Positions 5,691 through 24,524 of a stretch of 64,000 bases of DNA are shown here, one piece after another (position 1 is the first letter of the stretch; every line of letters starts with the position of its first letter). Both the position numbers and the translations under genes were made by a program. The stretch comes from Zootoca vivipara (Eukaryota), in NCBI RefSeq assembly GCF_963506605.1, contig NC_083282.1, positions 93,434,001-93,498,000 of the forward strand, written 5' to 3'. The notes beneath the pieces were generated by a model. The model did not search any database and was not told the DNA's origin. It was given only the letters and a program-made list of their open reading frames with translations.

Positions 5691-5774
5691 ACAGCCACCC
5701 TGTACCCGGGAGTCGTCTTTGGGATATGCTTCATCCTGAACTGTTTCATCTGGGGCAAACACTCGTCGGGAGCA
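5691..5774 (+). CDS. TM9SF4: TM9SF4 coding exon ([28 protein letters not shown])
   Basis: ttgcag acceptor and gtatgt donor, frame continuous. Confidence 0.95.
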
Positions 5775-6754
5775 GTATGTATCTTCCCACCTCTCTTTGC
5801 TCTCTCTGGAAACACTTGGCTTGGTCTACTCTTTTCTAACTCATATTCATAATTTGTGTGTGTTTATATGTTCTAAGAAACAATAAATGTTGGTTAGCTC
5901 CTTTTAAGCTCCTCATATGTTTTGCCTTCCCCAATATGCACAAACAATGCATCATTCTTATTCTTATTCTTTTGTTTCTCGCACCCCGCCCATCCGACTA
6001 GGTTGCCCCAGCCATTCTGGGCAGCTTCCAACATGAGACCTTAAAAGCTTCCCAATACATTCTGTGAAAGGACATTATCTCCCTCCCCTCAGGCCCCACC
6101 CCCAAGAGGATGTTGCCATTTCTGTAGCTATTTAAAAAGACATTTAAGGAAAAAAATTCTAAATCTTTGAGCTTTCCAAAATATTCTGTGAAATACCCAA
6201 GCAGGACACGTTTTGAACATTAGGGATTGTGAAACCACGTTAGCTGCCTGGTTTTGCATTCATTTCCCCCCTGCCAGGCGAGTTCTCTTAGACTCACCTT
6301 CACCAATCTGGAGTCTTCCAGATCAGGAGCAGGGGACCCTTTCTGGCTGGTGGGCCAGATCCTTATCTCCTGGCTGCTCTTGGGCCAAATTTGGCAAGTG
6401 TGCAGAGCCCGGGATCCAGTTGTGCCAGTCGCACCAGTCTTTTCAAGTGCTTTTGCCCAGCAGGGAGTGTGTCTTTGAACTGTGACAATGCCTCTTGCCT
6501 GCCAAGTTGGGGAGAGGGGTGTGTGGCTGTAACTGTGCATGGAAACCTCTGGCTTTTACGTGGGCTACTGCACCAAAAAGAAAAGAAAAATCTCATCTGT
6601 TTCTCTAGCTTCACTGCCATTATTATGTGGTCCCCCCAAAGGCTTCCCATCAGGGAATGAGGTGCTTGGGCTGCGAAAGGTTCCCCACTCCTTCTCTAAA
6701 GAAATGCTAGGCAATAGTATCACCTTGTGAACCTTCCGTCTTGATGCTCTGGGG

Positions 6755-7336
6755 CAGCGTTTCTCAACCGCTGTTCCGCGGCACACTAGTGTGCCGCGAG
6801 ACGCTGGCTGGTGTGCCGCGACGTGCGGCAACGAGAAGGGCGATTTGCATTGTCACGTAAGGTGCCTCAAAAGGAAACACTGGCCACCGGAAAGGAAGCC
6901 GGCCGGGTCACGACGCGAGGCGAGCGCCCGCGTCGTGACCCGGCCGGCTTCCTTTCCGGCGGGCTAGCGCTGCGTATTGGCGGCCGCCAGGCACGTGACA
7001 ATGCAAATCGCCCTTCTCGTCGCCGCACGTCGCGGCAAAATTTAGACAAACTAAACTAAAATTTAGACAAACTTAAAGAAGCTGGCTGGATGAGCTCAAC
7101 CTGAAACTTGCTGAGCAAAGGATTGTGCTGGCAGAGAAATCAGCGGCTTGTGAAGCCTTATTACAGGAGATTGCAACCAACACAGCAATTGGCAAGTGTT
7201 TCTTACAGTCATAATTATATAGTCAATATAGGGCGGCACAGAGTTAATTTTTTTAAACTTTTTTAATGGTGGTGTGCCTCGTGATTTTTTTCATGGAACA
7301 AGTGTGCCTTGGCCCAAAAAAGGTTGAGAAACACTG
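6755..7336. mobile_element. Non-autonomous hAT DNA transposon (582 bp) with captured host sequence
   Basis: TIRs cagcgtttctcaacc and ggttgagaaacactg; perfect 8-bp TSD ctctgggg at 6747-6754 and 7337-7344. Confidence 0.9.
7063..7197 (+). pseudogene. DNAH10: Frameshifted fragment of an axonemal dynein heavy chain (DNAH10-like) exon inside the hAT element
   Basis: Translates LDKLKEA, then after a frameshift LDELNLKLAEQRIVLAEKSAACEALLQEIATNTAI, followed by donor-like G|gcaagt; matches my recollection of the DNAH10 stalk sequence; not verified by search. Confidence 0.75.
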
Positions 7337-7447
7337 CTCTGGGGCAAAGGGGTGGCCCCAGGTACATCTTGCCTTGCCAGGTCCCATTCACCTATTGCTG
7401 TACCTTCTGCCAGCCACCTGTTCTAAGAGTTGGGTTGCCATTTGCAG

Positions 7448-7623
7448 GTCCCTTTCCCCACCATGGTGGCTCTCCTTTGCATGTGGTTCGGCATCTCCTT
7501 GCCCCTAGTCTACCTGGGATACTACTTTGGATTTCGCAAGCAGCCTTACGACAATCCTGTGCGGACCAATCAGATTCCAAGGCAGATTCCGGAGCAGAGG
7601 TGGTACATGAATCGATTTGTCGG
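7448..7623 (+). CDS. TM9SF4: TM9SF4 coding exon ([24 protein letters not shown]...[23 protein letters not shown])
   Basis: AG acceptor and gtgagt donor; [12 protein letters not shown] family motif. Confidence 0.96.
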
Positions 7624-10369: not shown

Positions 10370-10945
10370 GTAATAGAGCAGATTAATCTTGGGGTTGTCG
10401 TTGTGGGGTTGCAGGGAATGGAACCCAGTTCTGTAAGGTGCCTCAAAAGGAAACATGGATCAGATTTAGGCAGAGAGACAGAGCTCCTGTTCTCAAGTAT
10501 ACAAACCAGTTAATATATCCAGCTGAATTGATCAGTAATGCTTTTCCAGAACTGCACAAAAAAGCCAGCATGTCCTGGAGGAAAGTTGGCTTTCCCCCTG
10601 GCATGCTAATTTTCTGTGTGCAATGAGGGTTTTTGGCTTGTGTTTCTGTGAGGAAGAATTTACACTTTCACCTATCTGGAGAGTCTGGCTTCAGCTTGCA
10701 GTCTTGCCTAGTTTGAAGAGAACCGCAGGGATGAAAGCAACCTGGCTCTCCTTCCCCTGTCCTGTGCTGCAGATCCACTGCCCACCATACCTGAAGATAC
10801 CAAACCTGCATGCTCTTGGTCACAGCATGCCACTCGCAGAGCTTGTGTGGGCAAAACGGTGGGTGCCCAAACATGACTGGGCACCTGTGAGGGTTGTTGA
10901 GAGTGTTGGCAGAATGATGCCGTGTGTCTTTCCTCCGTTTGCCAG

Positions 10946-24388: not shown

Positions 24389-24524
24389 CATTGTTTCCCA
24401 AACTTGGGTCTCCATCTATTTTTGGGCTGCAACTCCCATCATCCCTACTTAGCAAGACCCGTGGTCAGGGATGGTGGGAATTGTAGTCCAAAAGTAGCTG
24501 GAGACCCAAGTTTGGGAAACACTG
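24389..24524. mobile_element. Palindromic MITE (ACTACAAYTCCC-type family)
   Basis: Whole element is an imperfect inverted repeat: tgtttcccaaacttgggtctcca and tggagacccaagtttgggaaaca. Confidence 0.75.

What the first reader, a model, noticed from the sequence alone, without database searches (positions are those of the whole stretch)
6755..7336. hAT transposon carrying a captured DNAH10-like dynein exon fragment (Pack-type gene capture)
Seen: a 582-bp element with TIRs and a perfect 8-bp TSD (ctctgggg) in a TM9SF4 intron. Positions 7063-7191 translate as LDKLKEA, then after a frameshift LDELNLKLAEQRIVLAEKSAACEALLQEIATNTAI, followed by donor-like G|gcaagt. The left junction is a duplication of aaaatttagacaaact. 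Knowledge: I recall the DNAH10 stalk coiled-coil start as LDKLKEATIQLDELNQKLAEQKIVLAEKSAACEALLEEIAVNTAV, which implies a 7-nt deletion here; DNAH10 is not part of this syntenic block. Inference: a DNA transposon acquired genomic exon-plus-donor sequence from a host gene and moved it, as Pack-MULEs do in plants, which is rarely documented in vertebrates. The family may have scattered dynein fragments and a ready-made splice donor genome-wide; this copy is in sense orientation about 250 nt upstream of a TM9SF4 exon. The ORF track misses it.
Basis: partly seen in the sequence, partly recalled or inferred. Interest (0 to 1): 0.9.

Follow-up and report, generated by a model that had tools for sequence, protein, structure and literature searches.

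The report
Lizard hAT transposon carrying DNAH10 exon piece
A 582-base cut-and-paste (hAT, SPIN-like) transposon in a TM9SF4 intron of a lacertid lizard carries a broken copy of the end of one dynein (DNAH10) exon plus the first ~20 bases of its intron; it belongs to a family present in roughly a thousand or more copies, a known kind of gene-fragment capture at an unusually high copy number.

Summary
Positions 6755-7336 are a non-autonomous hAT element with 15-nt terminal inverted repeats (TIRs, 14/15), a perfect 8-bp target-site duplication (TSD) CTCTGGGG, and SPIN-type ends. It lies in a TM9SF4 intron, 111 nt upstream of an exon. Inside, 7063-7191 is the 3' five-sixths of one DNAH10 stalk exon, broken by a 7-nt deletion.

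The piece stops exactly at the exon's phase-1 end. The next 20-23 nt match the intron read-through of a lacertid-type genomic ORF, P0030 (41/42 aa, tail GKCFLQS). So exon end, donor position and intron start were captured together. The cargo is squamate/lacertid-type (34/35 aa to Podarcis, 35/35 to Varanus), so it is not foreign.

Contig depth in two independent DNA runs puts the mid-exon part at about 3,000 times the single-copy flank. A related copy with another flank occurs in a second species. This copy is a derivative: about 220 bp of CpG-rich internal sequence is folded into a near-perfect palindrome.

The insertion appears present in two further individuals. RNA gave no coverage of TM9SF4, so use of the donor is untested.

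This scan has already reported the same family at four other loci (two followed up). It is a new member of a known kind (Pack-TIR), notable mainly for its copy number.

The parts
6747..6754 (.). left copy of the 8-bp target-site duplication CTCTGGGG
   Evidence: D8: 12-nt direct repeat TGCTCTGGGGCA at 6745-6756 and 7335-7346
6755..6769 (+). 5' terminal inverted repeat CAGCGTTTCTCAACC (terminal motif YARNG). An imperfect second block, CCGCGGCACACTAGT, extends the inverted repeat to about 36 nt.
   Evidence: TIR type compared with the SPIN entries in Novick 2010
6755..6818 (+). 5' backbone/subterminal region with repeated GTGTGCCGCGA motifs. It is shared with cargo-less and differently loaded family members.
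   Evidence: D1, D5; joints leaving at 6775, 6776 and 6818; depth about 5,000 times the flank
6814..7037 (.). CpG-rich near-perfect palindrome. Outer arms are 6814-6858 and 6993-7037 (45 nt, 98%). Inner arms are 6884-6917 and 6929-6962 (34 nt, 97%). The loop is 6918-6928. The left half is family sequence also seen in a second species; the right half is an inverted duplicate.
   Evidence: I1, I2; DNA fold -122.9 kcal/mol, z -16.9; X19 contig 6752-6927; variants that leave at 6927; CpG o/e 1.37
6859..6883 (+). 25-nt patch that breaks the palindrome's symmetry. Together with the 2 nt before it, it is identical to window 10433-10455.
   Evidence: table 3 (no X1 or X9 contig covers 6859-6886; species B and the right arm carry GCCTGGCGGCCGCCAAT... 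here)
7037..7076 (+). 21-bp tandem duplication at the left junction of the DNAH10 piece (AAAATTTAGACAAACT...)
   Evidence: D2, 19 nt, 95%, spacing 21
7063..7083 (+). DNAH10 exon piece, first part (LDKLKEA). A 7-nt deletion follows at 7084-7085.
7086..7191 (+). DNAH10 exon piece, second part (LDELNLKLAEQRIVLAEKSAACEALLQEIATNTAI plus the G of the split codon). It ends at the true exon end.
7192..7214 (+). start of the DNAH10 intron, captured with the exon (gcaagtgtttcttacagtcataa). The donor position reads GC here.
   Evidence: P0030 tail GKCFLQS is identical; other family variants share sequence only from 7216 onward
7216..7336 (+). 3' backbone/subterminal region, ending in the 3' TIR (7322-7336). 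This is the most abundant part of the family.
   Evidence: (depth 10,000-20,000 times the flank in X1; joints entering at 7225 and 7235)
7337..7344 (.). right copy of the target-site duplication CTCTGGGG
7448..7620 (+). context: the next TM9SF4 exon ([15 protein letters not shown]...). It lies 111 nt downstream of the element's end and 256 nt downstream of the captured donor position.

Best explanation
This is a non-autonomous hAT transposon of the SPIN-like group. It inserted, with an 8-bp target duplication, into a TM9SF4 intron.

Its family acquired, once and in a squamate (most likely lacertid-lineage) genome, the last ~136 nt of one DNAH10 stalk exon. The exon's donor position and about 20 nt of intron came with it. 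The acquisition most likely happened by template switching during repair or replication at a transposon copy; this step is inferred. The composite was then amplified by ordinary cut-and-paste transposition to the order of a thousand or more copies.

The family also spawned deletion derivatives and palindromic derivatives, and this copy is one of the latter. Here the exon piece is frameshifted by a 7-nt deletion, so it cannot encode dynein sequence.

At this locus the element most likely acts as inert intronic DNA. Shown: the anatomy, the DNAH10 origin, the exon boundary, intron capture at the level of a translated read-through, the multicopy state, and presence in a second species. Inferred: the capture mechanism, the order of derivatives, and inertness.
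For: - Ends: TIRs and TSD. The TIR matches SPIN_NA1_AC CAGTGKTTCTCAACCT 16/16 on the 3' end.
- Origin: the cargo matches only DNAH10 in the PDB (E 3.5e-11). Only one full-length protein appeared in the 1.84-billion-protein search, a DNAH10. The other hits were short genomic ORFs across the same exon.
- Boundary: 14 annotated reptile DNAH10 proteins (11 squamates, tuatara, an alligator and a tortoise) read NTAI|AEEKK, so the exon ends at 7191.
- Intron: P0030 carries the complete exon, identical to Podarcis muralis DNAH10, an upstream polypyrimidine read-through, and the same GKCFLQS tail as the element.
- Host type: the cargo is 34/35 identical to Podarcis, 35/35 to Varanus and 31-34/35 to other squamates.
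- Isolation: no neighbouring DNAH10 exons are in the window.
- Copy number: summed contig depth over 7100-7159 is 215,045 against 45-75 in the flank (X1), and 10,817 against 3.4 (X9). Reads and contigs leave both element ends into many different flanks. A cargo-less variant (6775 to 7225) exists, as does a non-palindromic variant (6927 to 7062 with extra in-frame ..REGG). A contig from a second species has another flank (all).
Against: - The parental DNAH10 locus was never seen as DNA. Intron capture rests on 6 translated residues, with a stop codon following in the element, in one anonymous Logan ORF.
- Depth summed over contigs is only a rough copy number.
- The element's donor reads GC, and it is unknown whether the gene has GT or GC.
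- An earlier follow-up on a sister copy (s1-850070) judged intron capture unsupported.
- The palindrome's patched segment has no contig support in the two DNA runs, so that part of the assembly is unverified.
Confidence: 0.85

Rival explanations
1. The cassette is functional. Its captured donor, perhaps together with the promoter-like CpG-rich part, is used. Copies would then create chimeric or alternative transcripts with host genes, here by splicing from 7191 to the TM9SF4 exon at 7448.
For: - The piece is in sense orientation, 256 nt upstream of the exon.
- The donor context G|GCAAGT is intact.
- The CpG-rich arm contains octamer-like (ATGCAAAT), E-box (CACGTG) and ETS-like motifs, seen by eye.
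- Tan 2021 reports that many Pack-TIRs are transcribed as chimeras.
- Family RNA reads are abundant.
Against: - No joint from 7191, and no loose end behind 7191, is among those listed for the RNA run, at about 100x family depth. The list is truncated, and TM9SF4 itself had zero coverage, so this is weak evidence.
- RNA depth continues undiminished past 7191 into 7192-7279.
- The donor is GC rather than GT.
- No pyrimidine-rich acceptor precedes the fragment.
- The fragment has in-frame stops in all frames.
Confidence: 0.06
2. The DNAH10 piece was captured in another host species and arrived with the transposon by horizontal transfer. SPIN elements are known for such transfer.
For: - The TIR is SPIN-type, and SPIN is a classic horizontally transferred family.
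- The cargo is 35/35 identical to Varanus but 34/35 to Podarcis.
- The family is present in a second species.
Against: - The intron read-through tail is identical to an ORF whose exon is identical to lacertid (Podarcis) DNAH10, including the RVV motif seen in no other sampled squamate.
- The single I/V difference is one transition, and I is the state in most squamates. It could be ancestral, or a change within the element.
Confidence: 0.06
3. The palindromic interior (6814-7037), or at least its 25-nt patch, is an assembly artefact rather than real sequence.
For: - No contig from X1 or X9 covers 6859-6886 (table 3).
- Strong hairpins are hard to sequence and assemble.
Against: - The arms differ by a 25/30-nt segment and by 2 substitutions, unlike a simple fold-back read artefact.
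- The scan lists a sister copy of 586 bp at another locus, consistent with a real palindromic subfamily. That copy was not inspected here.
- Short-read contigs often fail in such hairpins.
Confidence: 0.12

Closest known systems
Pack-TIRs of animals, especially multicopy Pack-hAT such as Pack-hAT-N8_XT of Xenopus tropicalis (Tan et al. 2021, PMC8277862)
   Same: A non-autonomous hAT with both ends intact carries a fragment of a host gene located elsewhere. The composite is flanked by its own TSD and occurs at several loci.
   Different: - Tan et al. found only 4 multicopy cases among 370; the frog example they illustrate sits on three different chromosomes. Here contig depth suggests about 10^3 copies of the cargo.
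- The cargo is an internal exon end plus intron start, not a UTR.
- The family has palindromic and deletion derivatives.
- Lizards are not mentioned in that paper's main text.
SPIN ('Space Invaders') hAT elements and their MITEs (SPIN_NA1_AC and others; Pace 2008 as cited in Novick 2010, PMC3014272)
   Same: The TIR CAGTGKTTCTCAACCT matches 16/16 at the 3' end and 15/16 at the 5' end. Both have an 8-bp TSD, a short non-autonomous form and very high copy numbers in squamates.
   Different: - The subterminal and internal sequences differ from what I recall of SPIN consensus sequences (recollection only, not tested).
- The TSD here fits NYYTARRN at 5 of 6 defined positions.
- No transposase was examined, so 'SPIN-like' rests on the TIR alone.
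Pack-MULEs of plants
   Same: They work alike: a TIR transposon picks up gene fragments and amplifies them.
   Different: Pack-MULEs belong to a different superfamily (Mutator: 9-11-bp TSD, long TIRs). Those features are not present here, so this is not a Pack-MULE.
Helitron gene capture in bats (my own knowledge: Pritham and Feschotte 2007; Thomas et al. 2014)
   Same: A vertebrate case in which a captured host promoter or exon fragment was amplified to hundreds or thousands of copies.
   Different: Helitrons use a rolling-circle mechanism and have no TIRs or TSD. Here the vehicle is a cut-and-paste hAT.

Membership tests
hAT superfamily (non-autonomous member) | 8-bp target-site duplication | tested here: met
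   CTCTGGGG at 6747-6754 and 7337-7344, 8/8
hAT superfamily (non-autonomous member) | short TIRs with the terminal motif YARNG | tested here: met
   CAGCG... and CAGTG... at the two ends; 15-nt TIR, 14/15. Motif definition from Novick 2010.
hAT superfamily (non-autonomous member) | mobilised by a hAT transposase (an autonomous partner in the genome) | not testable with these tools
   At 582 bp the element has no room for a full hAT transposase ORF (no transposase search was run); no vertebrate genome search was available.
SPIN group of hAT | TIR CAGYGGTTCTCAACCT / CAGTGKTTCTCAACCT | tested here: met
   The 3' end (reverse complement) is CAGTGTTTCTCAACCT, 16/16. The 5' end is CAGCGTTTCTCAACCG, 15/16 with Y at position 4.
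SPIN group of hAT | TSD consensus NYYTARRN | tested here: inconclusive
   CTCTGGGG fits 5 of the 6 defined positions (G where A is expected). One site cannot test a consensus.
SPIN group of hAT | transposase, or internal sequence, related to SPIN | not tested
   No SPIN consensus sequence was available in the tools.
Pack-TIR (Tan et al. 2021) | both ends of a TIR element enclose sequence derived from a host gene located elsewhere | tested here: met
   DNAH10 exon piece. The window holds TM9SF4 and neighbouring genes but no other DNAH10 exon. The parent was identified through proteins and ORF P0030, not as a DNA locus.
Pack-TIR (Tan et al. 2021) | multicopy type: the same chimera at several loci with distinct flanks or TSDs | tested here: met
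   Depth about 3,000 times the flank over the exon part in two runs. Loose ends at 6754 and 7336 show low agreement, meaning many flanks. The species-B contig has another flank. Other loci are listed by the scan but were not inspected here.
Pack-MULE | Mutator-type ends (9-11-bp TSD, long TIRs) | tested here: not met
   8-bp TSD, 15-nt TIR core (imperfect repeat to about 36 nt)

The most novel reading that the evidence does not exclude
A cut-and-paste transposon family in lacertid lizards has spread a cassette to the order of a thousand sites. The cassette is a promoter-like CpG-rich fragment plus a dynein exon end with its splice donor.

Some copies would act as portable first exons or alternative donors that create chimeric transcripts with host genes. 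That would be natural exon shuffling or gene trapping at a scale not described for TIR transposons in vertebrates.

The palindromic derivatives, like this one, would add long hairpin RNAs inside host introns.
Probability: 0.08. Interest if true: 0.7.

Novelty: new member of a known kind. Interest (0 to 1): 0.4.

Why it matters
Gene-fragment capture by TIR transposons is well known in plants and was catalogued in animals in 2021. In that catalogue nearly all cases were single-copy, and the paper attributes most of the single-copy ones to transposition-independent gap filling.

A hAT family that carried an exon end with its donor to about a thousand copies in a lizard shows that transposition-dependent spread of host exon sequence can reach MITE-like copy numbers in an amniote. 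The same genome holds several other cargo-bearing hAT families, according to the scan's earlier notes. That makes lacertids a good system for studying how such captures arise and whether they ever feed exon shuffling.

For this particular copy the practical message is modest: it is most likely inert intronic DNA. Gene predictors should not call the dynein-like ORF.

Tried and rejected
I could not fetch the DNA of P0030 or P0001, nor the DNAH10 locus, so the intron comparison stayed at the level of translated read-through.
- The search of earlier findings by sequence gave nothing. A word search on palindromes also gave nothing.
- The candidate second family copy at 24510 (TIR with 2 mismatches) is a different, shorter MITE.
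- I considered a composite of two MITEs, because of TIR-like 9-mers inside the element (GAAACACTG at 6874-6882; AGTGTTTCT at 7195-7203). I rejected it. 7192-7211 matches the DNAH10 intron read-through of P0030, there are no internal TSDs, and the whole 582 bp is flanked by one TSD.
- I considered that the similarity between 6874-6886 and the inverted 7190-7202 (13 nt, 1 mismatch) marks an inverted copy of the exon/intron junction. The chance expectation is about 0.1 per element, so I left it open.
- Rfam gave only sub-threshold miRNA-hairpin matches on the inner palindrome arms, which are not meaningful.
- The RNA test of a 7191-to-7448 junction is uninformative. Read depth was 0 on the TM9SF4 exon part and on the unique intron flanks. 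Conserved exons may also be filtered by the tool.
- No empty-site contig was seen in X1 or X9, so there is no sign of insertion polymorphism at this locus.
- The two reading-frame pieces were never joined across the 7-nt gap. The 35/36-aa piece was searched alone. The 7-aa piece was only compared with fetched proteins in a script.
- Mammal-type short ORFs among the hits were set aside and not pursued.

Full report
**Observation**

Window 6755-7336 begins with CAGCGTTTCTCAACC and ends with the reverse complement of CAGTGTTTCTCAACC. The octamer CTCTGGGG abuts both ends. The terminal pattern occurs nowhere else in the 64 kb, apart from a 2-mismatch hit in an unrelated small MITE at 24390-24524. 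An alignment of the two ends shows that the inverted repeat continues imperfectly to about 36 nt, through the block CC..GGCACACT.GT. The motif GTGTGCC(G/T)CG recurs subterminally.

These are hAT hallmarks: an 8-bp TSD and the terminal motif YARNG. The 16-nt end equals the SPIN_NA1_AC TIR CAGTGKTTCTCAACCT listed for Anolis (PMC3014272).

The element lies in an intron of a TM9 family gene on the + strand. The sequence from 7448 scores 1.8e-18 against Pfam EMP70. Further TM9SF4-like exons are visible on both sides.

**The dynein piece**

Frame 1 of 7063-7083 reads LDKLKEA. Two bases later, frame 3 of 7086-7190 reads LDELNLKLAEQRIVLAEKSAACEALLQEIATNTAI. The 35-aa piece finds only DNAH10 chains in the PDB (E 3.5e-11, 32/35).

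Against 1.84 billion representative proteins it finds one full-length DNAH10 and 27 short ORFs. Those ORFs are gene-caller read-throughs of this same exon in genomic contigs of many vertebrates.

They show the exon as (A)QCKRLEGGLDKLKEATIQLDELN...NTAI-G, with unrelated sequence on either side. Annotated DNAH10 proteins read ...NTAI|AEEKKK. So the exon ends in phase 1, at the G that corresponds to window position 7191.

The element therefore holds the last ~136 nt of a ~163-nt exon, minus 7 nt. Only 2 nt stand where T-I-Q should be.

**Intron capture**

One short ORF, P0030 (Logan, one 1,224-bp contig), reads MTTFLLLFPK-AQCKRLEGGLDKLKEATIQLDELNLKLAEQRVVLAEKSAACEALLQEIATNTAI-GKCFLQS.

- Its exon part is identical to Podarcis muralis (Lacertidae) DNAH10. 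It includes RVV, which no other sampled squamate has.
- It carries the exon's 5' part and an upstream polypyrimidine-like read-through, both of which the element lacks.
- I therefore take it to be the gene itself in a lacertid.
- Its six residues after the exon end, GKCFLQS, are identical to the element's read-through at 7191-7211, which is followed by TAA (41/42 overall). No other species' read-through resembles it.

So at least ~20 nt of DNAH10 intron came along with the exon end. Independent support comes from the reads: family variants with other or no cargo share sequence with this copy only from 7216-7225 onward (joints 6775 to 7225 and 6818 to 7235). That places the right edge of the cargo at about 7212-7215.

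This agrees with the earlier follow-up s1-848842 and disagrees with s1-850070 on this point. The limit of my evidence is that it is translated sequence from one anonymous contig. Whether the gene's donor is GT or GC is unknown, since both give glycine; the element has GC.

**Source of the cargo**

The 35 residues are 34/35 identical to Podarcis, 35/35 to Varanus, 31-34/35 to other squamates, and 33/35 to alligator and tortoise. The squamate-specific L (NLKLAEQ), the R shared with lacertids and Varanus, and the lacertid-type intron tail together point to capture within the host lineage rather than in a distant donor.

The single I/V difference may be an ancestral state or a change in the element. 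The window contains no other DNAH10 exon. Inclusion of intron sequence excludes a retrocopy.

**Copy number and relatives**

I laid two DNA contig sets of the same species from different studies (X1, X9), one contig set of a second species (X19) and one raw RNA run (X21) on 5720-7510.

| Window region | X1 summed word depth | X9 summed word depth |
|---|---|---|
| Unique flank | 45-75 | about 3.4 |
| Mid-exon bin 7100-7159 | 215,045 | 10,817 |
| Exon start with duplication, 7040-7099 | 49,389 | 4,056 |
| 3' terminal bin, 7280-7339 | 1,200,014 | 122,963 |

- The mid-exon bin is about 3,000 times the flank in both DNA runs.
- The bin 7040-7099 is about 760 times the flank in X1.
- The 3' terminal bin is about 2-4 x 10^4 times the flank.
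- Summed contig depth is a rough measure. Even so, two independent runs agree that the exon piece is present in the order of a thousand or more copies.
- Reads and contigs leave both ends of the element into many different sequences (agreement 0.48-0.64).

Variants seen:
1. A cargo-less MITE, made of 6755-6775, 28 AT-rich nt and 7225-7336.
2. A non-palindromic form in which 6927 is followed by AGCTYTCAACAGCCACCACCAC..GGGAGGGTGGT and then 7062. Read in frame this gives ..R-E-G-G-LDKL, which is at least 9 nt more of the exon than this copy retains.
3. An abundant deletion form that joins ..CCGCCGGAAAG to the last ~8 nt of the exon.

The contig from the second species covers 6752-6927 at about 90% identity, has a different flank, and continues into the same AGCTCTCAACAGCC... 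sequence. The loaded family is therefore not confined to one species.

The scan's own notes list four other DNAH10-bearing copies in this genome, of 474, 482, 500 and 586 bp. I did not inspect them.

**This copy**

It differs from the simpler form by a palindrome at 6814-7037. It has arms of 45 nt (98%) and 34 nt (97%) around an 11-nt loop. The fold energy is far beyond that of shuffled controls. CpG o/e is 1.37, against 0.18 in the flank.

The left half is family sequence. The right half is its inverted duplicate, joined to the DNAH10 piece through a 21-bp tandem duplication. Fold-back template switching is the simplest origin; this is inferred.

The arms differ in one segment. The left arm has a 25-nt patch (6859-6883) where the right arm and the second species carry GCCTGGCGGCCGCCAAT.... 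That patch, together with the two bases before it, is an exact 23-mer found again at 10433-10455. The second site is on the same strand, 3.6 kb downstream in another TM9SF4 intron (none expected by chance). No contig of X1 or X9 covers 6859-6886. I cannot tell whether this is templated repair of a broken palindrome in situ or an assembly problem.

**State at this locus**

Contigs of both individuals run from the unique flank into the TIRs:
- X1: 6469-6781 and 7315-7510, with no mismatch.
- X9: the same spans (its right-hand contig starts at 7317), with 4 differences and 1 gap in the left flank.

Only 20-27 nt of each contig lie inside the element. That is below the tool's 31-letter bridging rule, but it is incompatible with an empty site. 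No empty-site joint was reported. The insertion is thus probably fixed or common.

The RNA run had zero depth on the TM9SF4 exon part and on the unique intron, so the proposed 7191-to-7448 junction could not be tested. Among family reads (about 100x), depth continues past 7191. No joint or listed loose end marks use of the donor, although the list is truncated.

**Comparison and verdict**

This works like a Pack-MULE but is not one. It meets the criteria of an animal Pack-TIR of the multicopy, transposition-dependent type (Tan et al. 2021, PMC8277862). That study found 208 Pack-hATs among 370 Pack-TIRs but only four multicopy cases; the frog case it illustrates was amplified onto three chromosomes. 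Its main text does not mention lizards.

I found no paper linking DNAH10 with a hAT element. The finding is real. Its kind is known, and the same family has already been reported by this scan. The scale of amplification and the family's rearranging interior are the parts worth a specialist's attention.

Noticed in passing
window 6857-6879 and 10433-10455: An exact 23-mer (GTAAGGTGCCTCAAAAGGAAACA) is shared between the transposon's left palindrome arm and a site 3.6 kb downstream, on the same strand, in another TM9SF4 intron. In the element it replaces about 30 nt of family sequence, and no short-read contig of two individuals covers it. It could be filler DNA copied in cis during repair of a broken palindrome, or an assembly error.
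   Followed up: partly
window 5960-6079: The same intron holds a very high-copy repeat with an A-rich tail (SINE-like). Summed contig depth is about 10^4 times the flank, and it is well represented in RNA reads.
   Followed up: no
window 24390-24524: An unrelated ~135-bp MITE with TIRs of the type CAGTGTTTCCCAAAC / GTTTGGGAAACACTG. A further CAGGGGTGTCCAAAC-type end follows at about 24596.
   Followed up: no
window 6990-7012 (mirrored in 6839-6861): The CpG-rich arm contains promoter-like motifs seen by eye: CACGTG, the octamer ATGCAAAT and, further in, CCGGAAAGGAAG. This fits the scan's other notes that hAT elements of this genome often carry CpG-island or first-exon cargo. The arm may be a second captured fragment of unknown source.
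   Followed up: no
window 6799-6811 and 7077-7089: A 13-nt direct repeat (AGACGCTGGCTGG / AGAAGCTGGCTGG, 12/13) links the 5' subterminal region to the exact site of the 7-nt deletion in the DNAH10 piece. The chance expectation is about 0.1, so it may be coincidence or a trace of a template switch.
   Followed up: no
window 6887-6959: The inner palindrome arms give sub-threshold Rfam matches to several miRNA precursor models (best 33 bits against a gathering score of 51). This reflects a perfect hairpin, not a known family.
   Followed up: partly
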